IMG/VR virus record: IMGVR_UViG_3300017917_001123
Span: 248,001-312,000 of that record
Strand: one strand, 5' to 3'
DNA length: 64,000 bases
The translations under genes were made by a program, and so were the position numbers. A model generated the notes under the pieces. The model did no database searches. It saw only the letters and a program-made list of their open reading frames with translations, and was not told the DNA's origin. This document shows positions 23,870 through 59,466 of this stretch, piece after piece (within the stretch, counting starts at the first letter, position 1; every line of letters begins with the position of its first letter).

Positions 23870-24630
23870 TCAGTTATAGAATTAAGTCTAGCAATGGTTC
23901 AGTTCTTTTTGAAGGACTAGTACCTTACGGACTACTGCCATTTGTTCAAAAAGCATTTCTTACAAATCAAGATAGATTAATGGAGTTTGAAGTAGCAACA
24001 ACATCTCACGTAATTTCTAGAAACTTTTCAGACTTACCGTCAAACACTCAATACGATACAACCAATCCAGCACACATTTCAAACAGAATGTATCAGGATT
24101 TGATTACAAGCAAAGAATTAACACGCATTGCCTCTTTGAATAATGCGGCATTTGAAACTTGGCAAGCACAGTTAGATGCTGAGAGAGTTCAACAAGAACA
24201 AAACGCACTCAATGAAGTAGCCACTCAGGCACAGACATTATACGAGCAGTCCTTATTAAATCAACAACAGATTAGTGAAGAATATGCTCAACATCTAAGA
24301 GACGAAGCATACAGATTAGACATGCTCCGTGCTCAAACTGTTACACAGATAGCAGTTGATCCTACAACCAGCGTCAGTGCTCTAATGAGCGAAGTTGGAC
24401 ATAACTCGGATGTACAGCGACAAATTGCCGCGTGTATGCGAGCAAACAAAGAAATTACTAAACTAGTTCTAGCTAGCACATCAACATTGTGGAATACCAG
24501 CTACGAAATTATGGATGTTGTTGCTATACAAGCGGCAACGGATAACGAAATTGCTGATCAATTAGTTGGTAAGATTCCAGAAACAAGTCTTTTATATCAA
24601 AGCCTACAACGTCTCGGTATTCTTAGTTAA
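23845..24630 (+). CDS. hypothetical coiled-coil protein
   Basis: 261-aa ORF with a Q/E/A-rich helical centre. Confidence 0.6.
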   Translation: MFNTSTSLISYRIKSSNGSVLFEGLVPYGLLPFVQKAFLTNQDRLMEFEVATTSHVISRNFSDLPSNTQYDTTNPAHISNRMYQDLITSKELTRIASLNNAAFETWQAQLDAERVQQEQNALNEVATQAQTLYEQSLLNQQQISEEYAQHLRDEAYRLDMLRAQTVTQIAVDPTTSVSALMSEVGHNSDVQRQIAACMRANKEITKLVLASTSTLWNTSYEIMDVVAIQAATDNEIADQLVGKIPETSLLYQSLQRLGILS

Positions 24631-26098
24631 AGACTTTGACACCGTAGGTATTTTCCCATTCTCTAGAATCCTCTTCGTTGTTAACCATAGGCTTGCCTTT
24701 GATGTTAAGGCTTGTGTTTAACAGTACAGGACACCCTGTAGTTTTATACCACATAACTAGTAGGGCATGAAACTCAGGATTCATTTCTTTCGTGACAGTT
24801 TGTACACGACTAGTCCCGTCAGCATGGACGATAGCAGGAAATAGCTCAGGATTCCGGCAACGAGCGACCATTTGCATATAAGGACTGCTACCACTAGGGA
24901 TATCAAAGTAATAGTGAGCCAGCTCAGCCAAAACTGCCGGCGCAAAAGGTCTGAATTCTTGTCGTTGTTTAATTCCATTTACTTTATCCTTCATCTCTAA
25001 ACTTCTAGGGTCGGCTAATAGACTTCTATTACCCAATGCTCTTGGTCCAAACTCTGCTGGCCCTCTTGCTACTCCACAAATGCCTCTGGTCATTAAGAAA
25101 TGTAATATCTTAGCGTTGTTATGTTTTGTTGGGATGTTGTATCCCAAGTATGGTGTGTAGTCGATACGTTGTTTTGTTTTTGCCAATACACTACCAATTG
25201 CGCTTCCGCTATCGCCCGGAGCAGGCATAATCCAAACGTTATCAAAATACTTGTAGGCAATAGGATTTGCTGAACAGTTCAAAGCACAGCCGCCCATAAA
25301 GACTAAATTCTTGCTAGGAACACATTGTCTAGCATACTGTAACACACGTTCGAATAGTAGTTCATATACTGCCTGCGTTGCTGCCGCAATATCAAACATA
25401 TCCTGCTCTGTAGTCAAATCAGGACGCCAGTCTTTACAACCTTTGTGAAAATTTCTTTTAAATGAGACTAGTCCATTAGTTTCACTAAACGGAAAATGAA
25501 TAAAATCATTTAACATTGTTGTGAATAACCTCTTAGGATCACCATATGCGGCCATGCCCATGAGAATGTACTCTTCCTCGTTGGGCTTCAATCCACACCG
25601 TTGTGTCATTGCGCTATACCACAAGCCGATACTTTCTGGATACTCTAAACTGAATACCTTTGTAAGCTCGTCATCCTTGCCCTGCCAAATAGACAGCGTA
25701 TCATATTCTCCGATGGCATCGATAACTAGAACGCAGGCTTCATCAAACTTGCTAGTGTAGTAGCCTGCTGCCGCATGGCTATAATGATGTGCTACATATT
25801 CTATTGCTGTAGGAAATATGCGTTTTGATACATATTTCTTTACATTGTTTTCTCCCCACATCCATCCTTGACCTGCTTCTAGTTGACGCATAGTTTTAAG
25901 GAACGGACGTTCGTACCAAACAACTTTGTCTGGCGTGAGTCCTCTGTTATGTAGGTAGTAAGTTAAGTCAGAGTCCAAATCTGGATCGTTTTTAATTCCA
26001 GACCACCGCTCTGTTTCTGTGGCAAATACTAGCCGATCGTTATCAAATACCGCAACTGCGGCATTGTGACTGTTAGCTGATATTCCCCAAGTAATCAT
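24623..26098 (-). CDS. carbamoyltransferase (NodU/CmcH family)
   Basis: SHNAAVA, HHYSHAA, DAIGE, GGCALN, PAPGDSG, EFGPRALGNRS, FRPFAP, DGTSRVQTV, LLNTSLN. Confidence 0.95.
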   Translation of the reverse strand: MITWGISANSHNAAVAVFDNDRLVFATETERWSGIKNDPDLDSDLTYYLHNRGLTPDKVVWYERPFLKTMRQLEAGQGWMWGENNVKKYVSKRIFPTAIEYVAHHYSHAAAGYYTSKFDEACVLVIDAIGEYDTLSIWQGKDDELTKVFSLEYPESIGLWYSAMTQRCGLKPNEEEYILMGMAAYGDPKRLFTTMLNDFIHFPFSETNGLVSFKRNFHKGCKDWRPDLTTEQDMFDIAAATQAVYELLFERVLQYARQCVPSKNLVFMGGCALNCSANPIAYKYFDNVWIMPAPGDSGSAIGSVLAKTKQRIDYTPYLGYNIPTKHNNAKILHFLMTRGICGVARGPAEFGPRALGNRSLLADPRSLEMKDKVNGIKQRQEFRPFAPAVLAELAHYYFDIPSGSSPYMQMVARCRNPELFPAIVHADGTSRVQTVTKEMNPEFHALLVMWYKTTGCPVLLNTSLNIKGKPMVNNEEDSREWENTYGVKVFN

Positions 26099-26196
26099 TT
26101 GTAAATGTAAGGATCCATTTTACGCAGTTTCTTTATTTGCTGTCTGCGTTTATACCATCTATACGGTGTTAGCAACCAATCAAGTATTCTTTTCAT
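26095..26196 (-). CDS. small basic 33-aa protein MKRILDWLLTPYRWYKRRQQIKKLRKMDPYIYK
   Basis: Manual translation; fills the gap between the GT-like gene and the carbamoyltransferase, with an ATGA overlap at 26095-26098. Confidence 0.65.
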   Translation of the reverse strand: MKRILDWLLTPYRWYKRRQQIKKLRKMDPYIYK

Positions 26197-26860
26197 ATTG
26201 TTCTCTTAACCAATTATAATTATTAATCAACAACAGGGCTTCTGGGTTATCTTGATTGTACTCTCCGTAGGACCTTCCTGCTAGTGCGCCACGAATAGCG
26301 TCGTGTCCAAATGGTTTGTCCTCTCCTACAGAGCACCATACCTTAAGACGTATAGAAGTTTCCGTGTCTACTTGATTGTTAATTGTTTTGCTGGCTAGCT
26401 TACAACATTCTCTAAACCCGCTACGCCATGCGCTAAATGCGTCTGTGTTAAATGCTGTGTTGTTACTAACTTCGGGCATAGCATTAAACCTAGTACCGAT
26501 GCTAGTTGTCATGTCGGGCTTGCTAGTATCCATCTCCAGTGTTTGCTTTTTTGGTAAAAGTTTAACACCGCCGTATCCATATTCTAGTCCGTTAACAGGA
26601 TTACGACTGCGCCATACATGAACAGCATCGTAGTCCCATTCGGGTGCCTGATAGCTAAAGTCAAAGCTGTCTAATACATCAGCGTCGCCGTCGATTACCC
26701 AAAACATTTCTGTAAACGATTTCTTTGCGGCGGCAAGGTGTGCGTTATGAATACCTTCTACATCCTTAACCCGCTTTAATAAAGGAAAGCGACTCTTTAG
26801 CTTTTTGTAGTTTTCTTCAGCATTTGGTTCTCCATAGCTGATAAAGATCATATCATACAT
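26180..26860 (-). CDS. glycosyltransferase-like (GT-A) protein
   Basis: FISYGEPNAE, GIHNAH.AAA, FWVIDGD (DxD); paralog of 29384..30259. Confidence 0.55.
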   Translation of the reverse strand: MYDMIFISYGEPNAEENYKKLKSRFPLLKRVKDVEGIHNAHLAAAKKSFTEMFWVIDGDADVLDSFDFSYQAPEWDYDAVHVWRSRNPVNGLEYGYGGVKLLPKKQTLEMDTSKPDMTTSIGTRFNAMPEVSNNTAFNTDAFSAWRSGFRECCKLASKTINNQVDTETSIRLKVWCSVGEDKPFGHDAIRGALAGRSYGEYNQDNPEALLLINNYNWLREQYEKNT

Positions 26861-28046
26861 TAAAGTAGGCCTTATAGTGTTCTTCTAACTCAATCATTGC
26901 TTTGTGCTTTTTAATCGTTGTTAGATTTTCATAGTTGTGTTTTAAAATTGGTTTGATTGATTCTAACCAGCTTGCTTTGTCTTCTATGGCTTTTAGTTTT
27001 TGTAGACTATTGATAATAGCATCTAGTCTTTGCTCTGTAGGCAATGTGTCGTAGCTTTCGTCTATAAATCCGTCAAACGTTTTATATCCTAAATCTCGCA
27101 ACCTCTTCAAACTTCCCCGGCCACCCACAACAATAAACGGCTGTAGACAAGCAATAGGTTTAAAAATCTTTTCACTACAAAATGTAGATAACTCGTAGTC
27201 AGCAAACTGCGGCTCTGTTACAATGCTAACCCATGACTGTGCGTACAGATTTGGTAACACTCTTCCAATGTACACAGGATCTGGTTCTACATTGTTCGGC
27301 TTGCCATCAATTAACATAGGCAAATACTTGCGTCCTTGTTCTAGCAAACTTTGACTTGGCCAATCATTAGTTAATGGATGTATATGATGACCGTAGTCGT
27401 TCATACTAACAATACCGTCATCAAGTAAGCCCGCTTCTAATAACTTTAAGAAGAACCAGCTTCTATGTGAACGTGGCCTCTTGTTTAAGCAATCATATAG
27501 TTTAGTCTTTGTATTAGCAGACACAACGGGCATTGGTCTAGAACGAGCATACCACATAAGGTCTGGTTCAAAGTGCTCAAATGTAATAACCTTCATAGGC
27601 TTTACATTGTGTGTGCTAACATATATCGAATACTGCTCCGGTGCCTGTGCGTTGCCTGTTATGTATATAACTGCCTGCGGGGTAACACTATGGTTAGCTA
27701 ACTCTTGATGAAACCAATCCCATAACTGAGGTGTCTGATAACCTTCAAGTGATTGATCGATACACAACATTGCCCGCCCTTCCTGTAGGTCTAGCAAGTT
27801 CTGCTTAGGCAAATGGTTTAGAATACTGTCTCTAGCCCAGTCGTGCGGATGATGGTTAACACCTGTGCCAATAATGTAATGATCTGCGCTTCCTGTGATA
27901 ATGCTTATGTGATTGTCTTGATTAAAGTGATTAATCATTCTATCTAGCATAGGAGGTGTGGTAAATCGTTTGATACCAGATCCTGCCCTGTCTGTACAAG
28001 CAATAAAGTTTTCTCTAGCAGATATATTTTCAAACGCTACACGCAC
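26853..28046 (-). CDS. glycosyltransferase-like protein (GT10/GT-B-like C-terminus)
   Basis: CLNKRPR.HR; SIVTE...FCSEKIFKPI...PFIVVG resembles the fucosyltransferase EN..Y.TEK..A...PI..G motif. Confidence 0.45.
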   Translation of the reverse strand: MRVAFENISARENFIACTDRAGSGIKRFTTPPMLDRMINHFNQDNHISIITGSADHYIIGTGVNHHPHDWARDSILNHLPKQNLLDLQEGRAMLCIDQSLEGYQTPQLWDWFHQELANHSVTPQAVIYITGNAQAPEQYSIYVSTHNVKPMKVITFEHFEPDLMWYARSRPMPVVSANTKTKLYDCLNKRPRSHRSWFFLKLLEAGLLDDGIVSMNDYGHHIHPLTNDWPSQSLLEQGRKYLPMLIDGKPNNVEPDPVYIGRVLPNLYAQSWVSIVTEPQFADYELSTFCSEKIFKPIACLQPFIVVGGRGSLKRLRDLGYKTFDGFIDESYDTLPTEQRLDAIINSLQKLKAIEDKASWLESIKPILKHNYENLTTIKKHKAMIELEEHYKAYFNV

Positions 28047-29391
28047 GATAAAACTCCGCTAGGTGTGGGAAAGTTGTAGTAAAGTTTGTACCACGTCTGC
28101 GGTCATGTTCTTTAAACCATTCGTAGAAGTCTTTACGTCCCTCTGTTAACTTGTCCTCTGGATAGTGGGTAGTTTCCATATAGTCTACTACACGTCTAAA
28201 CTTTTCGTACTCTAATTCGCTAAACTTTCCTCTAGTCAGTCCCTTCATATGATTCTTAATGAATTCTAAATGGCTGTACATGTAAGGCATAAACTCCTCT
28301 TTTGGTAGTATGTTCATGTCGTACTGTAAAGGTTCTTTGAGATAGGGTGTGTCAAATCGAATACGCTGATACTGTGTTTGGAATATCTTGTTATACTTCT
28401 TACGCCATTCTAGGATCTTTTCTAACAAGCTAGTAAAGCTAGTAACTGCTAGAATGTTAAATGTGATCATAAAGGTAATGGGCAAGTTTGTCTTGGTAAG
28501 GTATATATCTAAGTTCTTTTCCCAAACTGTTAAGTCTAGTCCTGTGCGAGCATACTCCGCAGGCTTACCCCACGTGTCGATACTAGTAAACAGTTTAAAC
28601 TTTTTAATCTTACCTTCTTTGAGCAACTTGTTAACACGTTCTGTTAATCGTTCTACTAGGATAGGCTTTACACCTAAGTTACTGTTTAAATTAAGTTCTA
28701 AATTAGGTTTAGGATTGTTGTCTAACTCGTCAAACAAACGCCACGTGCTTTTTTGTAGCAAAGGTTCGCCGCCTGTGATGCGTAAGATGTTTAGTGTCTT
28801 ACTAACTTCGGGCCACCATTGCCACCATGCGTTAACATACGGGTTATTATCTTCTTCATAGACTTGGAACCAATCGACATCGTTTCTATGATTCTTAACC
28901 ATACTATAAGGGCCGTGATCTCTAATCTCTTTGTAGTAGGCAGAACTATGCTTTGGATGGCAGTAACCGCATTTGAAGTTGCACTCGTTTCCAAAACTTA
29001 TTTCAATGTATTCTGGATTTACGTTAGCCATTGGTGCGTTTTTAATTTCTGCAAAACGCTCGGGTGTATAGATACTAGCATTTCTTTCGTATCTATCGCT
29101 AATGTAGTCTGGACCCATTGCTTCGATGTTCCAGCAATATTGGCAACCACTTGGCTTTTCTCCCTGTAGCATAGCGTAACGCTCATCACGCTTTTGATTT
29201 GTGTTGTGTAATGCGCTAGGATTAATAGCTAATTCCAACAAAGGAACTACATGCGGTCTTGGATGATAGCAACTATGTGTCTGCCCTGTTTGTAAGTAGA
29301 TAGTTGTGTGATGCCACTTAGCCATACAAAATGTAGGGCTAATTTCATTCATTATAGGAATAATCTTTTTAATGCGATCTACGTCAGACAC
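28030..29391 (-). CDS. radical SAM protein with N-terminal twitch domain
   Basis: FC.AKW...HSCYH...GCQYCW; CNFKCGYC; ITGGEP; LNSN; SID. Confidence 0.85.
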   Translation of the reverse strand: MSDVDRIKKIIPIMNEISPTFCMAKWHHTTIYLQTGQTHSCYHPRPHVVPLLELAINPSALHNTNQKRDERYAMLQGEKPSGCQYCWNIEAMGPDYISDRYERNASIYTPERFAEIKNAPMANVNPEYIEISFGNECNFKCGYCHPKHSSAYYKEIRDHGPYSMVKNHRNDVDWFQVYEEDNNPYVNAWWQWWPEVSKTLNILRITGGEPLLQKSTWRLFDELDNNPKPNLELNLNSNLGVKPILVERLTERVNKLLKEGKIKKFKLFTSIDTWGKPAEYARTGLDLTVWEKNLDIYLTKTNLPITFMITFNILAVTSFTSLLEKILEWRKKYNKIFQTQYQRIRFDTPYLKEPLQYDMNILPKEEFMPYMYSHLEFIKNHMKGLTRGKFSELEYEKFRRVVDYMETTHYPEDKLTEGRKDFYEWFKEHDRRRGTNFTTTFPHLAEFYRACSV

Positions 29392-30259
29392 GATTTAACC
29401 TATAAAATTCGTCAAACGTATGAACTACGTACCCACTAACATCAGCGTCAAGAACAGGAACATCGATAAAGTTTATCGACTGTGCTTTAAACTTTTTAAT
29501 CAAATCGTCTGCGCCAAATCGTTCAATTGCTTTAAACATGGTAGTTAGTGTTTCGAAGTCGCGGACGTTAGTAACATCCCAGTCTGTACACATTGTTAGA
29601 TAAACACCTTGCCATGCTCCGGCAATAGCCCATAGACCGTTTTCTACGTGTGCGCCAAGGGTAAGCCATTGCTTTAATCTATGTAGGTTCTCCCACCAAA
29701 TAACTTCTTTGGCAGGTTTGCCCTGTTCTACTCTAACGCCTTTGTCTAAACACATCTTAACACCTTCGCGAAACCCTGCTCGCCATGCTTGAAGCGGTGT
29801 TGTGTTTATAATAGTATCGCTGTATGAAACTGTGAGTGGATAGTACCCTGCTTCCCAACAGAAGTCTACTTGGCCTTTGTCTTCTTCTGCGGCTTCGTGT
29901 GTTTTCATGTTAAGCACAAAGTCCTTGCGCCAAACTTTAAGACTGCCGTTTCCGTAGCGTAGTCCGTTAATACAGTTACGTCCTGGCCAATTGAACGCCT
30001 GTGCGTTTGGATATTGGTCTAAGTCTAATTGTAAATCCCAAAACTTAGGATTAACAATGTTGTCAGCATCAACGGTAACAAACCATTCTGTATTGCTTAG
30101 GTTAGCAGCCGCCTTGTGGCAAGCATCACTGCCCTTAACACCGTGAACACGTTCGACCCACGGCGCATCCTGTAACAGTTTAGCATAGTTCATTTCTGCG
30201 TTAGGTTCATCGTACGAGATAAACACACAGTCTAATTCATTAATTTTTAGCAACGACAT
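29384..30259 (-). CDS. glycosyltransferase-like (GT-A) protein
   Basis: FISYDEPNAE, GSDACHKAAA, FVTVDAD (DxD); start re-chosen at ATG 30259. Confidence 0.55.
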   Translation of the reverse strand: MSLLKINELDCVFISYDEPNAEMNYAKLLQDAPWVERVHGVKGSDACHKAAANLSNTEWFVTVDADNIVNPKFWDLQLDLDQYPNAQAFNWPGRNCINGLRYGNGSLKVWRKDFVLNMKTHEAAEEDKGQVDFCWEAGYYPLTVSYSDTIINTTPLQAWRAGFREGVKMCLDKGVRVEQGKPAKEVIWWENLHRLKQWLTLGAHVENGLWAIAGAWQGVYLTMCTDWDVTNVRDFETLTTMFKAIERFGADDLIKKFKAQSINFIDVPVLDADVSGYVVHTFDEFYRLNRV

Positions 30260-30803
30260 AAACAGAAATATCCTTAGGACCTTGATAAGGTAACGACATA
30301 GTTCCTTTTGTAATAAAAGGTTCAAGAGTAATCTCAAAGCTATCGTATATAGCGAATGGATTACCTTTGCGAGTTACATATAGATTGTACACTTTATCTT
30401 TAACTAAAGTCAATCGGTCGATGTTCTCTTGATTGGTAATTGTATCAAAGTAATTAGGATCGTAAATTAAGGTTAAACCTTTATCAGTTGCTTCGGTAAT
30501 AATTCTTGCGCTGGCAATGAAATTTTCAAAACTACGTAATGCTCTAACAACTTCGTCTTCTGTGTTCAAGACGATCTGACTCTCAAAAATTTCTTTTCGT
30601 CTAAATCCTACAATGTTACTATCAACTATTAACGGATAGTATTCGCTAGGTATTTTCTTTAAGGTAAAGAACGGTTCCAATAGACTGAAATCGTCTACTG
30701 GTAAGACTGTATATCCTTCTGCCTCTTCAAATTCAAACCCGATGCCCTTGATAACTAGCGTATCGGATTCAAACTTTACATAACGTCTTTGTACTTGTTC
30801 CAT
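30240..30803 (-). CDS. hypothetical protein
   Basis: 187-aa ORF overlapping both neighbours in the operon. Confidence 0.6.
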   Translation of the reverse strand: MEQVQRRYVKFESDTLVIKGIGFEFEEAEGYTVLPVDDFSLLEPFFTLKKIPSEYYPLIVDSNIVGFRRKEIFESQIVLNTEDEVVRALRSFENFIASARIITEATDKGLTLIYDPNYFDTITNQENIDRLTLVKDKVYNLYVTRKGNPFAIYDSFEITLEPFITKGTMSLPYQGPKDISVYVVAKN

Positions 30804-31639
30804 ACTAATGACTCTAATGTGTTGATGAAGTTATCTGTAATAAGATCCTTCTTTGTGTAATGTAGGATATCGGACTGAGCGTATGGCCCAATCTTTATAT
30901 TTAGGTCCCCGTCATAGTAAAACGGAATACGTTCTGTCCATTCGTAGTCTGTTGCGCCAAGCCCTTGACTTCTGCCCTTCATGTGTGTAAAGCGAGGAAA
31001 TGGTACAGCAGGATTACTCATATCTTCTACCATATCTAACATCTTAGCAGTTAGCGCACAGGCTTCGTCTGTTGGGATGCTGTCAAACTTGTAATCCTCT
31101 AATTGTTCTTTCCACAGCTCTGGATAATCAGTTAGTGCTTCTAGTACACGAAAAAACTTTGTAGTTTCTCTACTTTGTTTGAAGTATAACCAGCCACTGT
31201 AGAAGTCTGGCAATTTGTTTTGATCAACGACATATCTGTAATAACGATCTGTCATTGTTTCTCCTCTGAACGTCATAGGGCGGGTAGCAACATACAAGTC
31301 GTGTTTTCTAACAAACGGAAGCCAATGACTAACATCGCTTAGGAACAGCAGGTCGCTATCTAAGAATATAGTTTCTTTATAAGGCGTGTGCTCATAGGCT
31401 CTGCTTCTGGCATTCATTCCTTTAGGGCCATCGTAATTAATGACGGTATCAAATACCCATTTTAGTTTTAAGTTTTGAACAACCTTTGGAGTAGTTGTTG
31501 CGATGCTTACAGAATTAAATCCCTGCGGTTGTGTTAGTTTAATTGTTAGCGCAGTAGCATAGGCTAATCTAAGATAGTCTGTAGTCTGCGTGTTGTTGGC
31601 TATCATAAAGTAGCCTAGGTTAAACTCTTTTGAAATCAT
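30776..31639 (-). CDS. nucleotide-diphospho-sugar transferase (GT8-like)
   Basis: YLRLAYATALTI, TPYKETIFLDSDLLF (DxD), YSGWLYF, FTHMK, LHY. Confidence 0.65.
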   Translation of the reverse strand: MISKEFNLGYFMIANNTQTTDYLRLAYATALTIKLTQPQGFNSVSIATTTPKVVQNLKLKWVFDTVINYDGPKGMNARSRAYEHTPYKETIFLDSDLLFLSDVSHWLPFVRKHDLYVATRPMTFRGETMTDRYYRYVVDQNKLPDFYSGWLYFKQSRETTKFFRVLEALTDYPELWKEQLEDYKFDSIPTDEACALTAKMLDMVEDMSNPAVPFPRFTHMKGRSQGLGATDYEWTERIPFYYDGDLNIKIGPYAQSDILHYTKKDLITDNFINTLESLVWNKYKDVM

Positions 31640-32436
31640 TTGACTAACTCCATGAGCTTTGGTAACTTATCTAGCAAGTCGAATTTATTCATGTAGTGTA
31701 TGTCTTGCCCTTGCGTTTTAACAAGCGTTTCTCCACACATTAGGACTGTCAGTGTTTGATCTTTAACCTGTAGAATCTCATCTTTGTCTGTAAAGATTAT
31801 AGGACTTGGTAAGGCAGTATAAAACTTATCAAGACCAAACCCGCCCATAGTATGACAAGCAACACTAAATGCGTAATCGTTTCTAAATCTTCTTGTATCG
31901 AACTTATAGAGTGCGCCGTAGTAACTCCAGTTTTCTCTAACATGGTCAACAAGTTCAAACAGGGCTTTAACTTCAGGTGTCTTGTTAAAAATAATGTTTG
32001 TAGCCCAGAGCATAGGAATACTAGCAGGGTCTAGCATTAGTGCGCCTAGTGAATTGCCCAGCATGTCGTTCATACCTTCGCAAATCATAAAGTCTCTATC
32101 TGCTTCTAAGTAAGGCTTCAAGCAACTGCTTTGAACTAAGAAATCGCTGTCAATCACTAGTGTTCTGTCATAAGGGCTTAGTTCGTATGCCGAACTTCTG
32201 TTGGTGTTCTTAAACGAAATGGTCTTACCGGCAAGTGTTCTAGTATTGTCTGTTTCCACAGTAGTAACAATCAGTCCATCAAATACGCCCACATCTGTTG
32301 CGTCCAAGGTCTTGCTGTCTGTAACAAGCGTGACAGGAATGTTAAGATGTTTCTTAACAAGGCCTGCGGCTAAAACAGCTTGAGGGCCGTATGCTATGTC
32401 GCCATCAAAGGCGAAAATGACGCACCCTGTTGTCAT
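31636..32436 (-). CDS. nucleotide-diphospho-sugar transferase (GT8-like)
   Basis: SPYDRTLVIDSDFLV (DxD), LWATNIIF, RNDYAFS, IHYMNK. Confidence 0.65.
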   Translation of the reverse strand: MTTGCVIFAFDGDIAYGPQAVLAAGLVKKHLNIPVTLVTDSKTLDATDVGVFDGLIVTTVETDNTRTLAGKTISFKNTNRSSAYELSPYDRTLVIDSDFLVQSSCLKPYLEADRDFMICEGMNDMLGNSLGALMLDPASIPMLWATNIIFNKTPEVKALFELVDHVRENWSYYGALYKFDTRRFRNDYAFSVACHTMGGFGLDKFYTALPSPIIFTDKDEILQVKDQTLTVLMCGETLVKTQGQDIHYMNKFDLLDKLPKLMELVK

Positions 32437-32774
32437 AGGTCCACCAGTTTGGCTGCGGTTCGTTTTTGTTTGATTTGACTGTAGTCTGTCATGTATCTGT
32501 TTGTTACTTCAAAATACACACCTACAATCTTGTTGAAGAAATCCTGTAGGTTTTCAATTTCTACAGGATATTCGTTGTCGTCTAAGATAACGGCAGATTC
32601 ATAATCTTTAATTGAACTGATAAAACCAATCAGTTCTCTGCCTACAGTGAAAATGCCTCCGTTGTGTGCGATAACAAGTTCAGCAAGTGCTTTGTCTTTT
32701 AAGCGTTGTCTTTCTATTCCTAGTGTCTGTCTATAGTTTGCGTGTTCGATTGCTTGTTTAAGCCGATCATCCAT
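32433..32774 (-). CDS. hypothetical protein
   Basis: 113-aa ORF with SD (GAGG) and ATGA overlap. Confidence 0.6.
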   Translation of the reverse strand: MDDRLKQAIEHANYRQTLGIERQRLKDKALAELVIAHNGGIFTVGRELIGFISSIKDYESAVILDDNEYPVEIENLQDFFNKIVGVYFEVTNRYMTDYSQIKQKRTAAKLVDL

Positions 32775-32783
32775 GTGTGCCTC

Positions 32784-33665
32784 TTAGTAGTTGTTTGGTT
32801 TTGTCTGTGAATAAGGATAGTAGATTGCTACGTTATGATATATGTTACCATTAACATAGTCCGGACCGCCTGCGATGCCCGGGTGATCATCGACATAATA
32901 CACGGTCATAGTAATAGCAGTTCTTTGTTTAACGTCTGTGTTATTATGCCACAGATATATTTGTACATAGTTTGCTGTATAAGGACTTTCTGGACTATAA
33001 ATTCTAAATGCTTCGTTAGCGCCTGTGTTTGATGTTCCATAAACACCACCTGATCCCCAGCTGTTGTAGAATGTTCCGCCCCAGGCTGCGCCCGATTGGA
33101 ACATCCCCGTACGAGTCAGAACAATAGTTCCCATGTTTGCTAGCAAGTTTGACCATGTTGCGTTTTGGCTAGTGCCGTCGCCCCCTGATCGACTTCCTGT
33201 AAATTGTAGTCTGCCACCGCCATTCCAGAAACCCCTGTATGCGGCATTGTCTGCCCAAGTAACTGACACAGATCCTAATGGAGTTAATACTCCGTTCCAT
33301 GCTCCGCCATACCCATATGACGGGCCAGCAACATAAGCTAGCTGACCTGTACTGATAGCACCCCTATTAGAGTAAGCAGTATCAACACGAGCAGAGATTG
33401 TTGACAAATCAGTTGAAGTAATAATCGCCGTATCGGCTCTTGTTGTAAGGTCTGAGTTAGCACCTGTTTGTAATAGGTATGCTTTGTTAACGTCGGCTCT
33501 TAGATTGTTCCATTGAACACCGGTAATTTTTTCATTATCGGCTACCGTTGCCGCAGAGTAAGTTGTGTTATAGCCAAGATCGTTAGTAGTACCATCTGGT
33601 GTGCTTAACACACTACGCATTTTAAGAATAACTGGGTTCCAGTCTTCGTTTTGAATGATTGCCAT
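32784..33665 (-). CDS. putative virion structural protein
   Basis: G/S/T/N-rich; NLRADV..A...QTG, RGFWNGGG...F.G...G.G.SQ..TW; paralog of the next gene. Confidence 0.5.
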   Translation of the reverse strand: MAIIQNEDWNPVILKMRSVLSTPDGTTNDLGYNTTYSAATVADNEKITGVQWNNLRADVNKAYLLQTGANSDLTTRADTAIITSTDLSTISARVDTAYSNRGAISTGQLAYVAGPSYGYGGAWNGVLTPLGSVSVTWADNAAYRGFWNGGGRLQFTGSRSGGDGTSQNATWSNLLANMGTIVLTRTGMFQSGAAWGGTFYNSWGSGGVYGTSNTGANEAFRIYSPESPYTANYVQIYLWHNNTDVKQRTAITMTVYYVDDHPGIAGGPDYVNGNIYHNVAIYYPYSQTKPNNY

Positions 33666-33669
33666 AATT

Positions 33670-34569
33670 TTATCCTAATGTAGATCCTAGCTGTGTAGCT
33701 GTTGGTGTTTTATTATACGAGTAATATGTGTTAACAGAAAAACCTAATGTGCCGTCGACTAGGTCTGGACCTTGCCCTGTTGCTACGTGTGGGTCTAGTA
33801 ATACATATTCGATCTCAAAACCTGTTGCAGTAAGAACATTATTACCGCCATATGGTCTAATATAAATGGTAAAGCTATTAGAAGTGTAGTTTGCGTCACT
33901 GGCAAGTATTCTAAAAGCAATACCAGCGTTTACACCAGTTTGTCCATTCTGTAACAAATTATATAGCCCGCCGTTTGGAAAACTACCGTTACGTGATTGA
34001 TTTTGTTGAATGGCAGAGTTACCACTGAATACTAAAATTCCAATAGCCTGGAAGATATTAGTCCAGGAAGAAGTTTGACTTGAACCACTACCTCCTGTCA
34101 TTGATCCGCCAATGGTAATAAATCCGCCTAAGTTAGCCCACCCACGAAACTCTGCGTTTGATCCCCAATCGAATCTTACTTTATATTTGTGCTCGGTCTT
34201 CCATGTGGAACCGTTAACATAATTATCTGATGTTGTAATTTGTAATTTTCCAACACCGGCAGTAGTTCTGCTAGCATAGGCAATGTCAACTTTTGCTGAT
34301 ACTTCTGTTAAGTCGTCTGTTTCGATTAACTGACTTCTGTTGTAGATAGCTAGTCCAGTAGACAATCCTGTTTGATGTTCAATTGCTAGGTTAACGTCTT
34401 GAATTACTAGGTTAAGGTCTTGTCCAACAACTTTGGCGCCTTGGACGGCAGGCAAACTAGCAACAGCTAGGTTGTATCCGAGGTCGAACACCGTGCCGCT
34501 AGGTGATCCGATAATTGATGCTATTTTGTTCTGTACTAAATTGAACGCTTCGTCCGTTACTTTTGCCAT
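33670..34569 (-). CDS. putative virion structural protein
   Basis: Paralog of 32784..33665 (DLGYN, HQTG, RGWANLGG, SQTSSW, DPH..G.GPD.V.G). Confidence 0.5.
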   Translation of the reverse strand: MAKVTDEAFNLVQNKIASIIGSPSGTVFDLGYNLAVASLPAVQGAKVVGQDLNLVIQDVNLAIEHQTGLSTGLAIYNRSQLIETDDLTEVSAKVDIAYASRTTAGVGKLQITTSDNYVNGSTWKTEHKYKVRFDWGSNAEFRGWANLGGFITIGGSMTGGSGSSQTSSWTNIFQAIGILVFSGNSAIQQNQSRNGSFPNGGLYNLLQNGQTGVNAGIAFRILASDANYTSNSFTIYIRPYGGNNVLTATGFEIEYVLLDPHVATGQGPDLVDGTLGFSVNTYYSYNKTPTATQLGSTLG

Positions 34570-34580
34570 CAGTTGCTCCG

Positions 34581-34901
34581 TTATACCCTAAACGACTCGC
34601 CGCATCCGCAACGATCTCTTTCATTAGGGTTCTTAAATTCAAATCCTTCGTTTAGCCCGTTCCTTACATAATCAACAGTTAGGCCATCTACATAAACATG
34701 GCTTTTGGGATCAACAAAAATGCTGAATCCGGTTTTTTCAAACACTAAATCGGAACTGTCGGGCTCGTCTACATATTCTAACACATAAGCTAGCCCTGAA
34801 CAGCCAGTAGTTTTAACGCCTATCCGAATGCCCATTCCTTTCCCTCTCTTTTGTAGGTTTAACAAGAATTTATTGTAGGCTTCAGTTGTTAAGTTGACCA
34901 T
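34581..34901 (-). CDS. iscA: iron-sulfur cluster assembly protein IscA (HesB family)
   Basis: [25 protein letters not shown]...CGCGESF. Confidence 0.92.
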
Positions 34902-34912
34902 AAAGTGTTAAA

Positions 34913-34935
34913 ATAAATATTATACGCATATTTAG
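34913..34935. promoter_or_regulatory. divergent late-type boxes between iscA and iscU
   Basis: ATAAATA plus 34913-34919; CTAAATA minus 34935-34929; iscU has SD AAGGAG. Confidence 0.5.
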
Positions 34936-34967: not shown

Positions 34968-35366
34968 ATGGCATACAGCGAAAAGGTAATTGATCATTAT
35001 GAAAACCCCAGAAATGTGGGTAGTTTTGATAAGTCTGATACTTCCGTTGGTACTGGTATGGTTGGTGCACCTGCTTGCGGCGATGTTATGAAATTACAAA
35101 TAAAGGTGGACGATGCTACAGGTATTATTACAGATGCGAAATTTAAAACGTATGGCTGTGGATCGGCTATCGCAAGTTCGAGCCTTGTCACAGAGTGGGT
35201 CAAAGGAAAAACTCTTGACGAAGCCGGAGCAATCAAAAACAGCCAAATTGCCGAAGAATTAGCCCTTCCCCCGGTAAAGATTCACTGTTCAATTCTAGCA
35301 GAAGATGCTATCAAAGCCGCAGTAGCGGACTACAAGGAAAAACATGGAAGCAATAACAGTAACTGA
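34968..35366 (+). CDS. iscU: Fe-S cluster scaffold IscU
   Basis: [48 protein letters not shown]. Confidence 0.96.
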
Positions 35367-35670
35367 TGCGGCTTATGACAAGATAATTGACGTACTTGCC
35401 GAAGAAAACAATCCTAATATTGCTCTTAGGGTATTTGTTCAGGGCGGCGGCTGTTCGGGCTTCCAATATGGTTTTACCCTAGACGAAGAACAAAACGAAG
35501 ACGACTTTGTTATTGAAGGCAAAGTTAAGATTTTAGTTGACTCGATGAGCTACCAGTACCTTGTAGGTGCTACTATAGATTACAAAGATGAAATCTACGG
35601 TAGCCAATTTACTATTAAAAATCCCAACGCCCAATCAACTTGTGGCTGTGGCTCTAGTTTTTCCGTTTAA
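35344..35670 (+). CDS. erpA: Fe-S insertion protein ErpA (HesB family)
   Basis: [46 protein letters not shown]. Confidence 0.9.
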
Positions 35671-35678
35671 GGATATTA

Positions 35679-36929
35679 ATGAAGATAGCTATACTAGGTG
35701 TAGGTTCAGCAGGTTCTATTTCAATTGCCCAACTTTGTGCTCATGTTCCTAAAGGTTGTAAAGTAGTCAGCATACACGATCCATCAATTCCTATGTTTCA
35801 AATAGGCGAAAGTACAAATGCTAATATGGTATCTGTTCTTGAGCAAGCATGTCACTTTAGTTTCACTGAAGATCTTCCAGCAATGGAAAGTACAATCAAA
35901 TTCGGTAATAAGTTTATGAAGTGGCGTGACCGAGATTGGTTCAACCCTTTGCTCGATGGTGGCATCGGAATACATTTCAACAACTTTAAATTAAAAGAAT
36001 TTGTAATCAGTCGAGTTAAAAAACATTGGCCTGATAAATTTGAAATGATAGAGGGAAACGTTTCTAATTTAGTGAACCATGGAACGTATGCCGACGTTGT
36101 AGTTGACGGACAGACCCATAGGTTTGATTGGGTAATTGATACACGAGGAACACCAACCAACTGGAGCGAATACGAAATTGTAGACGGCATTTCGATTAAT
36201 AGCGGAATTATTCATACAGTAAACGAGCCAGGAAACTTTCAATATACAGAACATCTAGCAACAGCAAATGGCTGGATGTTCGGAGTACCACTAACATCTC
36301 GTCATACTCACGGTTATCTCTTTAATGATAAAATTACTTCTAAAGAAGAAGCCATTGAAGATATGAAAAAATATTTTGGCACAGACGATATTGGCCGTAA
36401 GAATGCTCCGGTACACTATCAATTTAAGAGTTACTTTGCTAAAAAAGTTCTAGAAGGTAGAGTCTTAAAGAACGGCAACAGGGCTAACTTCTTTGAACCA
36501 ATTAGCGCCAGTGGAATATTCTACTATATCTATACAAACTATCTTCTAATTGATTTGTTTAAGAAAAGACACAACGAAGATGAACTAAATCAAAAATTTA
36601 GAGATTTCGGAAATCAGTTGGCAGATCTTATTTGTTTCTTTTATCACGGCGGAAGTACTTACGATACACCATTTTGGAAATATGCCAAAGAAAACGCAAG
36701 ACAGCGACTTTTTAGAAGTCCGTTTTTTAGAAAAGCGTTAATTGACTGTTTTGTCAAGGGCGAAGCAGGGTTACCACATTATGCTGACCCGTGGATCTTT
36801 AGTGGATATCATCTTCATTTAATCGATAAAAAGTTTGGATATAATTACTTCACAGATCCTGTAAAAAATCGGCAAGCAGTAGCAGAAATTGATGCCAACT
36901 TAAAGTCTCAAGGAAAAATAATATTATGA
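35679..36929 (+). CDS. flavin-dependent tryptophan halogenase-like protein
   Basis: GVGSAG, IGEST, TIKFG..F..W, GWMFGVPL.SR...GY, FFEPISASG. Confidence 0.75.
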   Translation: MKIAILGVGSAGSISIAQLCAHVPKGCKVVSIHDPSIPMFQIGESTNANMVSVLEQACHFSFTEDLPAMESTIKFGNKFMKWRDRDWFNPLLDGGIGIHFNNFKLKEFVISRVKKHWPDKFEMIEGNVSNLVNHGTYADVVVDGQTHRFDWVIDTRGTPTNWSEYEIVDGISINSGIIHTVNEPGNFQYTEHLATANGWMFGVPLTSRHTHGYLFNDKITSKEEAIEDMKKYFGTDDIGRKNAPVHYQFKSYFAKKVLEGRVLKNGNRANFFEPISASGIFYYIYTNYLLIDLFKKRHNEDELNQKFRDFGNQLADLICFFYHGGSTYDTPFWKYAKENARQRLFRSPFFRKALIDCFVKGEAGLPHYADPWIFSGYHLHLIDKKFGYNYFTDPVKNRQAVAEIDANLKSQGKIIL

Positions 36930-40093: not shown

Positions 40094-40309
40094 GTGGCAA
40101 AAGACGATTGTATCGTAATGTTCGGTACTGTTGAAGAAGTACTACCCAACGCAATGTTTCGCGTTAAGCTCGAAAGCGGACAATATGTTCTAGGACATAT
40201 CTCTGGTAAGATGCGTCAAAACAGAATTCAAATTCTACTAGGTGATAATGTCAAAATTGAAATGAGTCCATATGATTTGTCTAAGGGACGAATAGTTTAT
40301 AGACAATGA
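40094..40309 (+). CDS. infA: translation initiation factor IF-1
   Basis: AKDD.I...[13 protein letters not shown]....[30 protein letters not shown]. Confidence 0.95.
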
Positions 40310-41106
40310 TCCCTATCATTACAGGTTCTGACGGTTATATAGGAACCAACCTATCCCAGCTATTCAATAAGCACAATAGATCTTTTGTTGGGCTTGATCG
40401 CAAATCAGGTCCAGATCTCCTGAGTGCCGAGGGCAAGGATCTTTTTGAGGAATGTGCTAGTACAGCGGATGTAGTTATACATCTTGCGGCTCGTCCTCGA
40501 ATTCCTCCTAGCTGGGTAGATACTACTGCTTATATTCGTGATAACATTGAGCTAACAGAATATGTTGCTCGAATATGCGCCGAACAAGGCTGTCATTTAA
40601 TATTTGCTAGTTCTAGCTCTGTTTACGGGAACGGAACAGGTCCTCTGAATCCCTATGCTTGGACTAAAAAAGCCGGAGAGGACATTATTCGTATCTACGG
40701 CGAAAAAGGACTAAGTTACACAATTTGTCGCTTGTTTACTACCTTTGGCAATAACGGACCCTTGGTTTTAGATAAGTGGCTCAAGCAAAGCCTAGCCGGA
40801 GAACCTATAACACTCTACGGCGATGGCACACAAAGTAGAGATTTTATTCATGTAGAGGATGTAGCAGATGCTCTTTACTCTGCTTATCTTGCCAAATTAG
40901 ACAAAGAAACGCTAGATGTAGGCACAGGCAAAGCCCACAAACTACAGGATATTGCGGACTGGTACGGGAACGAAATTATTCGTGGTCCTGCTCAAGAGGG
41001 CTATGCTCACAGCACTCAAGCGAAAGCCCAGCGAACAATGGAATTGCTCAACTGGGCTCCTAAACGTCCAGTAATTAGTTGGATCCGTTCTGGCCTAGAT
41101 ATGTAG
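40306..41106 (+). CDS. NAD-dependent epimerase/dehydratase (extended SDR)
   Basis: [29 protein letters not shown] (YxxxK), [16 protein letters not shown]. Confidence 0.9.
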
Positions 41107-47612: not shown

Positions 47613-49181
47613 ATGAAGTATAGATATTACGTAGTTGTAAATGATCCGCAGTTTAAGGCTGCGGTTCATACAGAATTAGTCAGTGACAGAGGAACAGAAT
47701 TTGTCCCTTCAAGAAGAGTATCGGCAGACAATCCAATGCGCCATAGCGAGTATAATGGTTGTTATATGTTAACTCCTGAAGAAGCTCAACAACTACAAAA
47801 CGACTCTAGAGTAAATGCTGTAGAGCGTGTTCCTGAAGATATTGGGATCAGTTTAAAACCACTGTCTGTTATGACAGCACAATATAATAAGACAACCGCT
47901 ATAGCAAACACTCACAGAAATTGGGGGTTAGTTAGATCTTCTAGCAGAGCAGAGCCTTACGGTGCGGCAACTAATTTAACTACTTTCAATTACAACCTAG
48001 ATGGAACAGGAGTAGACATTGTTATTATGGATAGTGGTGTTTTAAAATACCATCCAGAAATGGCAAAACGTTCAGATGGTACTGGCGGAACACGATATGT
48101 AGACATTAACTGGAGTCAGTTTGGTATCATAGCAAATAACGGTTCAGGTAGCTGGCAAGGGGATATTGACGGTCACGGAAGTCACTGTGCCGGCATTGCC
48201 GCAGGTATCACCTGCGGATGGGCCAAAGGCGCACAAGTCTATGGATTTAATATTTTAGATCCTAACAATGCTACAACCTACGTTAGTCCGTTGCTGGCCT
48301 TCCAAACAGTACGTGCTTGGCATAATGCCAAACCTATTGATCCTAATACAGGTTATAAACGCCCGACTGTTGTTTCAATGAGTTTTGGTTACGAACTGAC
48401 CTACACTGACATGGTTACAACAACATGGCGCGGCACAACATACAATACAACTGGCCCGGCAAGCGCATACGGTCAAGTTAGTGCCGATGGTAGTGCTCCT
48501 CTAGCAGATAGCGACTTGTCAACACACGGATATCGATCACCTTCCTTAGAAGCAGAAATACAAAGCTGTATTGATGCTGGCATTATTATGATTGGTGCGG
48601 CAGGTAATCAAGCAATAAAAGTAGATGTTCCAGGAGGAATCGACTACGATAACTACTATACCGACTCGTTTGGCGATCGTTGGTATTATCATAGAGGTAC
48701 AACTCCTAGCGCAACATCAAATGTCGTTTGCGTAGGATCAATTAGCTATTCAACTCCAGAACATAAAGTAAGTTATTCAAATACTGGGCCTAGAGTTGAT
48801 GTGTTTGCTCCGGGACTTGCTATTGCTAGTGCCTACATTAATCAAACAGAGGGAGGCAATCCTGCGGTCATAGATCCACGCAGTACAGCAAGCACCTCAT
48901 CTGTTACAACATCGTTCTACTTACAAAAGATTGGCGGCACGAGTATGGCATGTCCACAGGTTGCTGGAGTTGTTGCTTGCTTGTTACAAAGTCGTCCTTG
49001 GTACACACAGTGGCAAGTATCGCAATGGGTTAAAGAAAATGCCACAACGGGGTTATTAGACGAAACTTTTTACGGCGGAGCAGGCTATACACAATACGGC
49101 GGACTACAGGGGGCAGGGAATAGAATTTTATTCCAGCCATTTAATGATCCGAATCCTTGGTCAATAACAAGCAACTCTTAA
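47613..49181 (+). CDS. subtilisin-like S8 serine peptidase, probably virion-associated
   Basis: Catalytic D (IVIMDSG), H (GHGSHCAG), oxyanion N (AAGN), S (GGTSMACP); N-terminal propeptide-like segment. Confidence 0.9.
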   Translation: MKYRYYVVVNDPQFKAAVHTELVSDRGTEFVPSRRVSADNPMRHSEYNGCYMLTPEEAQQLQNDSRVNAVERVPEDIGISLKPLSVMTAQYNKTTAIANTHRNWGLVRSSSRAEPYGAATNLTTFNYNLDGTGVDIVIMDSGVLKYHPEMAKRSDGTGGTRYVDINWSQFGIIANNGSGSWQGDIDGHGSHCAGIAAGITCGWAKGAQVYGFNILDPNNATTYVSPLLAFQTVRAWHNAKPIDPNTGYKRPTVVSMSFGYELTYTDMVTTTWRGTTYNTTGPASAYGQVSADGSAPLADSDLSTHGYRSPSLEAEIQSCIDAGIIMIGAAGNQAIKVDVPGGIDYDNYYTDSFGDRWYYHRGTTPSATSNVVCVGSISYSTPEHKVSYSNTGPRVDVFAPGLAIASAYINQTEGGNPAVIDPRSTASTSSVTTSFYLQKIGGTSMACPQVAGVVACLLQSRPWYTQWQVSQWVKENATTGLLDETFYGGAGYTQYGGLQGAGNRILFQPFNDPNPWSITSNS

Positions 49182-59458: not shown

Positions 59459-59466
59459 TATAAATA
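59459..59466 (+). promoter_or_regulatory. perfect T4 late consensus TATAAATA
   Basis: Intergenic, 28 nt before ATG 59495. Confidence 0.65.

What the first reader, a model, noticed from the sequence alone, without database searches (positions are those of the whole stretch)
24623..34901. One 10.3-kb operon couples two virion-like paralogs to five GT-like genes, a radical-SAM enzyme and a carbamoyltransferase
Seen: 13 minus-strand ORFs with overlaps or gaps of 11 nt or less, from iscA through two structural-looking paralogs, two GT8-like DxD proteins, two FISY.EPNAE GT-like paralogs, a twitch RS, a GT10-like protein and a 33-aa ORF to a NodU/CmcH enzyme. A TAAATA box lies at 34929-34934. Established: NodU-type enzymes O-carbamoylate sugars. 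Inference: a self-contained virion glycosylation-and-carbamoylation system whose first genes encode the acceptors or their platform; it could mask the particle or tune receptor binding.
Basis: partly seen in the sequence, partly recalled or inferred. Interest (0 to 1): 0.7.

Follow-up and report, generated by a model that had tools for sequence, protein, structure and literature searches.

The report
Tail-fibre-linked glycosylation gene module
A giant pond phage carries a tightly packed 13-gene operon whose core, an unusual fibre-type protein followed by sugar-adding enzymes, recurs in the same order in dozens of uncultured phages, usually right after tail-fibre genes. It most likely decorates a virion surface protein with a tailored sugar chain.

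Summary
Thirteen minus-strand ORFs (24623-34901) are packed with gaps of 11 nt or less and overlaps of up to 28 nt, behind a TAAATA motif that behaves like a T4-type late promoter in this 331.6-kb jumbo phage from a pond metagenome.

**Enzyme calls**
- o06 has a GT8-like GT-A fold (Z 15.6 to LARGE1 and GlyE). o05 is its paralogue.
- o08 and o11 are divergent GT2-like proteins with an invariant DxD.
- o09 is an N_Twi radical-SAM enzyme.
- o13 is a NodU/CmcH O-carbamoyltransferase, closest to NovN, GdmN and TobZ.
- The "GT10-like" call for o10 is not confirmed.

**New finding**
- The order par, o04, o05, o06, (o07), o08 is fixed in 49-50 of 50 testable IMG/VR loci and in Ralstonia phage RsoM2USA.
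- In 31 of 41 loci the module sits directly after tail-fibre genes.
- The radical-SAM enzyme, o10, o11 and the carbamoyltransferase are lineage-specific add-ons.

**The par protein**
- It is a phage-specific fold with no solved relative.
- Elsewhere it is fused to Ig, lectin, Gly-rich, esterase and subtilase domains.

Virion-protein glycosylation is the best reading (about 0.5), but no glycan or acceptor is shown.

The parts
34929..34934 (-). TAAATA motif, a candidate T4-like late promoter core, 33 nt upstream of iscA
   Evidence: Sequence. Genome-wide, 10/10 TATAAATA and 81/146 TAAATA copies lie within 100 nt upstream of ORFs. It is the only such motif in front of an operon gene.
34581..34901 (-). 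IscA-type Fe-S carrier (o01), first gene of the operon
   Evidence: PF01521 at 2.3e-18. It precedes par on the same strand in L004, L006, L007 and L017.
33670..34569 (-). parA: N-terminal three-helix bundle plus C-terminal beta-sandwich; a phage-specific fibre-module protein and candidate glycan acceptor or partner
   Evidence: AF2 model pLDDT 92. No solved relative. Family of 1497 clusters. Invariant first gene of the module.
32784..33665 (-). parB, paralogue of parA
   Evidence: 32% identity, E 1e-30 to 2e-37.
32433..32774 (-). o04, a 113-aa conserved protein of unknown role that always lies between par and the GTs
   Evidence: Present in 50/50 loci. Alignment A7. No family hit.
31636..32436 (-). 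o05, GT8-like GT-A glycosyltransferase (paralogue of o06)
   Evidence: hhalign against the o06 family: 98.7%, E 4e-16. DSD motif invariant.
30776..31639 (-). o06, GT8-like retaining-type GT-A glycosyltransferase
   Evidence: AF2 pLDDT 90. Foldseek: glycogenin 3e-8. VIA Z 15.6 to LARGE1 and GlyE, 14.5 glycogenin, 13.6 LgtC.
30240..30803 (-). o07, a 187-aa poorly conserved protein of unknown function in a fixed position
   Evidence: Orthologues in close loci. Positional equivalents elsewhere match only weakly.
29384..30259 (-). o08, divergent GT2-like (GT-A) protein with the FISYxEPNAE N-terminus and an invariant DxD
   Evidence: Alignment A4. Atlas neighbours are named GT2, TM 0.9. 11/70 family members hit PF00535. 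Follows o06 in 58/59 loci.
28030..29391 (-). o09, N_Twi twitch-domain radical-SAM enzyme
   Evidence: NF033640 at 313 bits against a cut-off of 170. CxxxCxxC is visible in the sequence.
26853..28046 (-). o10, a 397-aa accessory protein; GT10-likeness unconfirmed
   Evidence: Atlas score 0.79 to Glyco_transf_10 clusters only; relatives are fused to methyltransferase or epimerase domains. No Pfam hit in 10 homologues.
26180..26860 (-). o11, short paralogue of o08 (GT2-like)
   Evidence: 34% identity to o08. Fused o08-o11-like tandem proteins are common.
26095..26196 (-). o12, a conserved 33-aa basic micro-ORF overlapping the carbamoyltransferase start
   Evidence: Conserved in L004, L005 and L006 with an invariant C-terminal DP[FY]IYK.
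24623..26098 (-). o13, NodU/CmcH-type O-carbamoyltransferase
   Evidence: PF02543 at 1.3e-43 and PF16861 at 3.3e-51. PDB: NovN 4e-61, GdmN, TobZ.
34968..35670 (+). Context: divergently transcribed IscU and a second IscA
   Evidence: PF01592 at 1.6e-55 and PF01521 at 1.1e-18. The same arrangement is seen in L004 and L006.

Best explanation
The operon is one lineage's elaborated version of a widespread phage module that begins with a fibre-type protein (par). par is followed by a small conserved protein (o04), two GT8-like glycosyltransferases (o05, o06), a variable small protein (o07) and a GT2-like glycosyltransferase (o08). The proposed mechanism has six steps. (1) The operon is transcribed late from a TAAATA-type promoter. 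(2) The soluble cytoplasmic GTs use host nucleotide sugars to build a short glycan directly on par, or on another fibre protein that par associates with, before virion assembly. (3) Lineage-specific enzymes tailor the glycan. Here these are a second GT2-like protein (o11), o10, one N_Twi radical-SAM enzyme and a NodU/CmcH enzyme that O-carbamoylates a sugar hydroxyl. (4) The phage's own IscA/IscU proteins supply Fe-S clusters to the radical-SAM enzymes. (5) The modified protein ends up on the tail-fibre apparatus. (6) There the glycan could alter adsorption, stability or recognition. What is shown: gene identities, folds, gene order, conservation and fibre context. What is inferred: the acceptor, the glycan, the timing and the virion location.
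For: Enzymes: o06 has a GT8-like fold over its whole length, and o05 is its paralogue. The o08/o11 family has an invariant DxD and GT2 links. o13 is a bona fide O-carbamoyltransferase. o09 is an N_Twi radical-SAM enzyme. Linkage: the order par-o04-o05-o06-(o07)-o08 on one strand holds in 49-50/50 distinct IMG/VR loci, with o08 in 58/59. It also holds in L004-L007 and L014-L017 and in the cultured phage RsoM2USA, gp355-gp348. Its sister phage XacN1 lacks both the par and o08 families. Virion context: in 31/41 loci the gene directly upstream of par is a tail-fibre protein. In RsoM2USA the module follows the sheath gene gp359 and gp356, which the RsoM2USA paper assigns to a virion gel band (PMC8504454). 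A second par homologue there, gp417, lies between 1257- and 1369-aa proteins, and the N-terminal part of the 1257-aa one matches this window's tail-protein-like 585-aa ORF. The par module is fused to He_PIG, Ig_3, Big_2, Calx-beta, Laminin_G_3, PA14, Gly_rich_2, BD-FAE and Peptidase_S8 domains. None of the 13 proteins has a predicted membrane-spanning segment. The promoter motif is shared with very large, structural-looking genes.
Against: No direct evidence shows that par is in virions. RsoM2USA proteomics covered only the 10 strongest gel bands, and none was a par homologue. par has no solved structural relative. Its best weak matches are lectin- or adhesin-type beta-sandwiches. Its most conserved residues (N, W, Y, R, D, H, Q) could equally form a sugar-binding site. 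A predicted parA-o04 complex gave no answer. In this window the operon is not next to the fibre genes, which lie at genome 85.7-93.5 kb. It sits instead beside a radical-SAM and tailoring island that also fits metabolite chemistry.
Confidence: 0.5

Rival explanations
1. Virion glycosylation occurs, but par is not the acceptor. par is a lectin-like fibre subunit or adaptor that binds the glycan or the host surface, and the GTs modify the neighbouring tail-fibre proteins.
For: Beta-sandwich matches to galectins, collagen adhesins and tailspike C-terminal domains, Z 4.4-6.5. A weak CBM_11 hit in RsoM2USA gp355. The conserved W/Y/N/R/D constellation. Fibre genes lie directly upstream in 31/41 loci.
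Against: When the module moves away from the fibre genes, as in this window, L004-L007 and L017, only par travels with the enzymes. All structural matches are below the level the tool considers meaningful.
Confidence: 0.17
2. The enzymes remodel the host envelope polysaccharide (LPS or capsule) to block superinfection. This is what has been proposed for GT clusters of jumbo cyanophages.
For: Iyer et al. 2021 (PMC7824862) read jumbo-phage GT clusters, and a carbamoyltransferase/halogenase/2OG-oxygenase cluster, as surface-polysaccharide modification. GT8 also includes LPS enzymes such as LgtC, Z 13.6.
Against: None of the 13 proteins has a predicted membrane-spanning segment, and family scans found no lipid-carrier transferase, flippase or polymerase. 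The module has a fixed linkage to a fibre-type protein and to tail-fibre genes. The promoter motif is late-type.
Confidence: 0.13
3. The operon, together with the adjoining radical-SAM island, makes a sugar-derived small molecule such as an antibiotic-like metabolite. par would be a carrier, an immunity protein or unrelated.
For: The nearest solved relatives of o13 tailor novobiocin, geldanamycin and tobramycin. There are 15 radical-SAM genes, including B12-dependent ones, plus 2OG-oxygenase-like proteins, methyltransferases, an aminotransferase and a Trp halogenase nearby. The literature offers a similar reading of cyanophage clusters.
Against: This does not explain why a 300-aa fibre-module protein is the invariant first gene, or why the module sits at the end of tail-fibre arrays. 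The carbamoyltransferase is present in only 10/39 loci.
Confidence: 0.12
4. The GTs glycosylate phage DNA.
For: Phage GTs classically modify hydroxymethylated bases (general knowledge; cited in PMC12619734).
Against: The 93%-complete genome has no ThyA-family hydroxymethylase. The GT8-like fold's strongest matches act on proteins or glycans. The context is tail fibres.
Confidence: 0.03

Closest known systems
Mycobacteriophage virion glycosylation (Freeman et al. 2023, cited in PMC12619734)
   Same: Phage-encoded cytoplasmic glycosyltransferases lie next to structural genes and are thought to decorate virion proteins.
   Different: There the acceptors are C-terminal tails of capsid and tail-tube subunits, and no dedicated acceptor-like protein, radical-SAM enzyme or carbamoyltransferase is mentioned for them in the papers read here. 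Here the module carries its own fibre-type protein and GT8-like plus divergent GT2-like enzymes, and nothing has been shown biochemically.
Giant-virus glycosylation clusters (chlorovirus capsid protein, mimivirus fibrils); recalled from memory, not tested here
   Same: Virus-encoded, host-independent GT clusters are linked to a surface protein.
   Different: Those are eukaryotic viruses with unrelated proteins, and they encode their own nucleotide-sugar synthesis. This genome lacks a sugar nucleotidyltransferase.
GT8 protein glycosyltransferases: glycogenin, GlyE of the pneumococcal serine-rich adhesin pathway, LARGE1, UGGT catalytic domain
   Same: o06 shares their GT-A fold over 200-235 residues, Z 14-15.6. 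o06 also has a DxD and a conserved downstream His.
   Different: Sequence identity is 8-16%. There is no PF01501 hit. Donor and acceptor are unknown.
NodU/CmcH/TobZ/NovN/GdmN O-carbamoyltransferases
   Same: Both Pfam domains score far above cut-off, and E is 4e-61 to NovN.
   Different: The protein is shorter (491 aa against 576-702), sits in a phage operon and has an unknown substrate. It is an accessory part of the module (10/39 loci).
Jumbo cyanophage carbamoyltransferase/halogenase/2OG-oxygenase clusters (Iyer et al. 2021, PMC7824862)
   Same: A similar enzyme palette lies nearby: carbamoyltransferase, Trp halogenase, 2OG oxygenases and methyltransferases.
   Different: Cyanophage carbamoyltransferases are only 25-30% identical. 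In the 'phages' collection, tblastn with o06 and with o08 found only RsoM2USA, so those clusters lack these two families at that sensitivity, and parA found nothing.

Membership tests
CAZy GT8-like retaining GT-A glycosyltransferases (o05, o06) | GT-A (Rossmann-like) fold superimposable on GT8 structures | tested here: met
   o06 model pLDDT 90. Foldseek glycogenin 3e-8, probability 1.00. VIA Z 15.6 (LARGE1, GlyE), 14.5 (glycogenin), 13.6 (LgtC). o05 is linked by hhalign at 98.7%.
CAZy GT8-like retaining GT-A glycosyltransferases (o05, o06) | DxD metal/nucleotide-sugar motif plus a downstream metal-binding His | tested here: inconclusive
   The motifs D94-S-D96 (o06) and D96-S-D98 (o05) are present. 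In o06, D96 is invariant in 28 sequences and the first Asp is conserved in the alignment consensus; in o05 both are invariant in the 4-sequence alignment. H219 of o06 is invariant. Equivalence to the glycogenin ligands was not checked residue by residue.
CAZy GT8-like retaining GT-A glycosyltransferases (o05, o06) | Match to the family's sequence model | tested here: not met
   No Pfam hit at E up to 10 for o05, o06 or the RsoM2USA homologues. No precomputed Pfam domain on 59 homologues.
GT2-like GT-A glycosyltransferases (o08, o11) | Match to PF00535 or related models | tested here: inconclusive
   The window proteins have no hit. 11/70 diverse family members hit PF00535 (best 1.3e-7) and 3 hit PF13641.
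GT2-like GT-A glycosyltransferases (o08, o11) | DxD motif and GT-A fold | tested here: inconclusive
   D64 and D66 are invariant in 70 sequences. The fold is inferred only from Atlas neighbours named GT2, TM 0.9. No model was built here, and profile searches of PDB sequences were empty.
GT10 fucosyltransferases (o10) | Match to PF00852 or a demonstrable GT10 fold | tested here: not met
   No Pfam hit for o10 or 10 homologues. The Atlas feature score of 0.79 is below the tool's lead threshold.
NodU/CmcH O-carbamoyltransferases (o13) | Carbam_trans_N plus Carbam_trans_C domains above cut-off, and homology to solved members | tested here: met
   150 and 174 bits against cut-offs of 24 and 27. NovN 4e-61, GdmN, TobZ.
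N_Twi twitch-domain radical-SAM (o09) | NF033640 above cut-off, with the CxxxCxxC motif | tested here: met
   313 bits against 170. The motif is present in the translation.
Phage virion glycosylation systems | Glycosyltransferase genes embedded in or adjoining virion structural genes | tested here: met
   In relatives, 31/41 loci lie directly after tail-fibre genes, and in RsoM2USA the module follows the sheath and tube region. In this window the operon is about 7 kb from fibre-like genes and far from the main fibre array.
Phage virion glycosylation systems | Glycan detected on a virion protein | not testable with these tools
   This needs glycoproteomics. Only DNA runs of a pond metagenome hold this phage.

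The most novel reading that the evidence does not exclude
par is a dedicated virion scaffold that is hypermodified by more than glycosyltransferases. The phage's large radical-SAM arsenal would also act on it: 15 genes here, and 4-7 tandem N_Twi paralogues directly after the module in relatives. So would oxygenases, methyltransferases, a halogenase and a carbamoyltransferase. This would be a protein-level, RiPP-like hypermodification of a tail-fibre component that diversifies between lineages as a host-range or defence-evasion device.
Probability: 0.15. Interest if true: 0.88.

Novelty: new variant of a known kind. Interest (0 to 1): 0.68.

Why it matters
Glycosylated phage particles are so far documented mainly for mycobacteriophages. 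This module would extend virion glycosylation to a large, mostly uncultured group of jumbo phages. The o06 family has at least 242 matching stretches in IMG/VR, and the par family spans 1497 clusters at 50% identity. It would also bring a dedicated fibre-type partner protein and unusual tailoring chemistry (radical-SAM, O-carbamoylation). It offers a testable handle on how large phages vary their adsorption apparatus without changing the protein sequence. It gives tentative functions to several large families of 'hypothetical' phage proteins. One cultured phage, RsoM2USA, carries the module, so the idea can be tested directly.

Tried and rejected
- **No signal for most genes.** Pfam, NCBIfam and PHROG scans found nothing for par, o04, o05, o07, o08, o10 or o11. 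o06 matched only phrog_1903, a family of unknown function.
- **PDB profile searches.** Profile searches of PDB sequences with the o05, o06 and o08/o11 alignments gave only spurious hits.
- **Searches of isolated phages.** Megablast of the operon and tblastn of parA against isolated phages found nothing. A single-sequence locus search for parA also failed.
- **par fold searches.** Foldseek against PDB gave no hit at E<=0.001. VIA-wide gave a best Z of 6.5, below the tool's meaningful range. The AFDB label 'flagellin N-terminal domain' on a par relative was not followed, because par's topology lacks C-terminal helices.
- **o08 versus o06.** hhalign shows no relationship.
- **parA + o04 complex.** No answer either way.
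- **o10 as GT10.** Not confirmed.
- **Transcription.** No RNA run was listed in the one 'kind any' search made. The three runs listed are DNA runs of one pond-metagenome study, and one of them holds the sequence.
- **'Moraphage' lineage paper.** Checked; it is not this phage group.
- **DNA modification.** Considered and set aside, because no ThyA-type gene is present.

Full report
**Source and observation.** The window is bases 248001-312000 of a 331,570-bp IMG/VR virus record that CheckV rates 93% complete. It was assembled from a pond metagenome, and no RNA run was listed among the three runs found. GC content is about 41%. The 13 minus-strand ORFs between 24623 and 34901 are all present. 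With the longest ORFs, no gap exceeds 11 nt, and nine junctions overlap by 4-28 nt.

The TAAATA box lies 33 nt before the iscA start. In this genome all 10 copies of TATAAATA, and 81 of 146 copies of TAAATA, lie within 100 nt upstream of ORFs. They peak at -20 to -40, often in front of very large genes. The motif therefore behaves like a T4-type late promoter. The only other minus-strand copy inside the operon lies within o06.

**Gene identities.**
- o01 is an IscA-type carrier.
- o13 has both NodU/CmcH domains. Its closest solved relatives are NovN (4e-61), GdmN and TobZ.
- o09 is an N_Twi twitch radical-SAM enzyme, 313 bits against a cut-off of 170.
- o06, modelled from 28 homologues (pLDDT 90), matches GT8-type GT-A enzymes over its whole length. 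Foldseek gives glycogenin at 3e-8, and B. subtilis YfnF/YfnD top the Swiss-Prot list. VIA gives Z 15.6 for LARGE1 and GlyE, 14.5 for glycogenin, 14.2 for UGGT and 13.6 for LgtC.
- o05 is its paralogue, with hhalign at 98.7% and E 4e-16.
- o08 and o11 are 34% identical. They share the FISYxEPNAE start and an invariant DxD. Their family has at least 7995 proteins, many of them tandem two-domain forms. Atlas neighbours are named GT2, and 11 of 70 members hit PF00535.
- o10 could not be confirmed as GT10-like.
- o04, o07 and the conserved 33-aa o12 remain unassigned.
- None of the 13 proteins has a predicted membrane-spanning segment.

**The conserved module.** Homologues of parA led to contigs with the same gene order. 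More distant o06 homologues gave the same picture.

In IMG/VR, 242 stretches encode an o06 relative. I analysed 64 distinct loci:
- Among 50 loci with enough upstream sequence, o04 is present in 50, o05 in 49 and par in 49.
- o08 follows in 58 of 59 loci. The one exception has a carbamoyltransferase inserted before it.
- Downstream the content varies: N_Twi radical-SAM genes in 33 of 39 loci (4-7 tandem copies in 24), o11 in 13, o10 in 12 and the carbamoyltransferase in 10.

The cultured Ralstonia phage RsoM2USA has the core plus a radical-SAM gene and o11 as gp355-gp348. A second radical-SAM gene and the carbamoyltransferase lie elsewhere in its genome. Its sister phage XacN1 lacks both the par and o08 families.

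**What par is.**
- The parA model (pLDDT 92) is an N-terminal three-helix bundle joined to a C-terminal beta-sandwich.
- No solved structure matches convincingly. Only uncharacterised phage and metagenome proteins match.
- The family is large, with 1497 clusters at E<=1e-3.
- The module also occurs at the N-terminus, the C-terminus or the middle of 500-1700-aa proteins. These carry He_PIG, Ig_3, Big_2, Calx-beta, Laminin_G_3, PA14, Gly_rich_2, BD-FAE and Peptidase_S8 domains. That is the domain vocabulary of phage fibres and adhesins.
- In 31 of 41 loci the gene immediately upstream of par is a 420-650-aa tail-fibre protein with a shared N-terminal domain.
- In RsoM2USA the module follows the sheath gene and gp356, which the RsoM2USA paper assigns to a virion gel band. 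gp417, a second par homologue, lies among very large proteins.
- In this window and its close relatives the module has moved next to Fe-S assembly genes. Only par moved with the enzymes.

**Mechanism and rivals.** The most economical reading is cytoplasmic glycosylation of par, or of a fibre protein bound to it, late in infection, with optional tailoring including O-carbamoylation. I put this at about 0.5. The main sub-rival is that par is a lectin-like partner rather than the acceptor. Its weak structural matches and its conserved W/Y/N/R/D residues allow this.

Host-envelope remodelling and metabolite synthesis are the published readings for GT and carbamoyltransferase clusters of jumbo cyanophages (PMC7824862). 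Both fit the enzyme palette, but neither explains the fixed par linkage or the tail-fibre position. The proteins also lack any predicted membrane-spanning segment.

DNA glycosylation is unlikely, because no ThyA-type hydroxymethylase is found. The genome has no sugar nucleotidyltransferase and only two epimerase-like genes. The system therefore depends on host nucleotide sugars and is not self-contained.

**Comparison and novelty.** Virion glycosylation by phage-encoded GTs is known for mycobacteriophages (cited in PMC12619734). From memory, it is also known for giant viruses. This module differs in four ways: its enzyme families, its dedicated fibre-type first gene, its association with radical-SAM arrays and its occasional carbamoyltransferase. 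My literature searches found no description of it. I rate it a new variant of a known kind, pending biochemical proof.

**What remains unexplained.**
- The role of o04, o07 and o12.
- The function of the N_Twi radical-SAM arrays.
- Whether the 37-kb island, which holds all 15 radical-SAM genes found in the genome, belongs to the same pathway.

Noticed in passing
window 1142-23121, continuing upstream to genome 240 kb: All 15 radical-SAM genes found in the genome lie in one island of about 37 kb. Six are N_Twi type and three are B12-binding type. They sit among 2OG-oxygenase-like small ORFs, two methyltransferases and an aminotransferase, directly beside the operon. In distant relatives 4-7 tandem N_Twi paralogues follow o08.
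   Followed up: partly
window 34968-36929 (+): IscU, a second IscA and a Trp-halogenase-family gene are transcribed divergently from the operon. The same arrangement is conserved in related contigs (L004, L006). This suggests the phage supplies Fe-S assembly for its radical-SAM enzymes.
   Followed up: partly
window 26095-26196 (-): A 33-aa basic ORF is conserved in three relatives, with an invariant C-terminal DP[FY]IYK. Its stop overlaps the carbamoyltransferase start (ATGA). Its function is unknown.
   Followed up: partly
whole genome; e.g. window 34929-34934, 59461-59466: TATAAATA/TAAATA behaves as a late-promoter motif. All 10 TATAAATA copies are upstream of ORFs, including genes of 2788, 4437 and 1122 aa.
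   Followed up: partly
L006:11809-16131 (also L007, L018-L045): In one clade a 1440-aa protein is inserted between parB and o04. It combines Peptidase_S8, a BD-FAE esterase, a He_PIG Ig domain and a C-terminal par domain.
   Followed up: partly
window 47613-49181 (+): A 522-aa subtilase-family protein (PF00082 at 1e-28) sits among fibre-like genes (585, 1291 and 916 aa). It may be a virion-associated protease.
   Followed up: no
window 40306-41106 (+): An NDP-sugar epimerase/dehydratase-family gene is conserved near the module in relatives. A second copy lies at genome 1630-2274. The genome has no sugar nucleotidyltransferase.
   Followed up: partly
genome 85.7-93.5 kb (outside the window): Four tandem 592-704-aa genes carry the shared tail-fibre N-terminal domain (NENF..LLENFA..GQLWYD). 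In other phages this domain directly precedes par.
   Followed up: no
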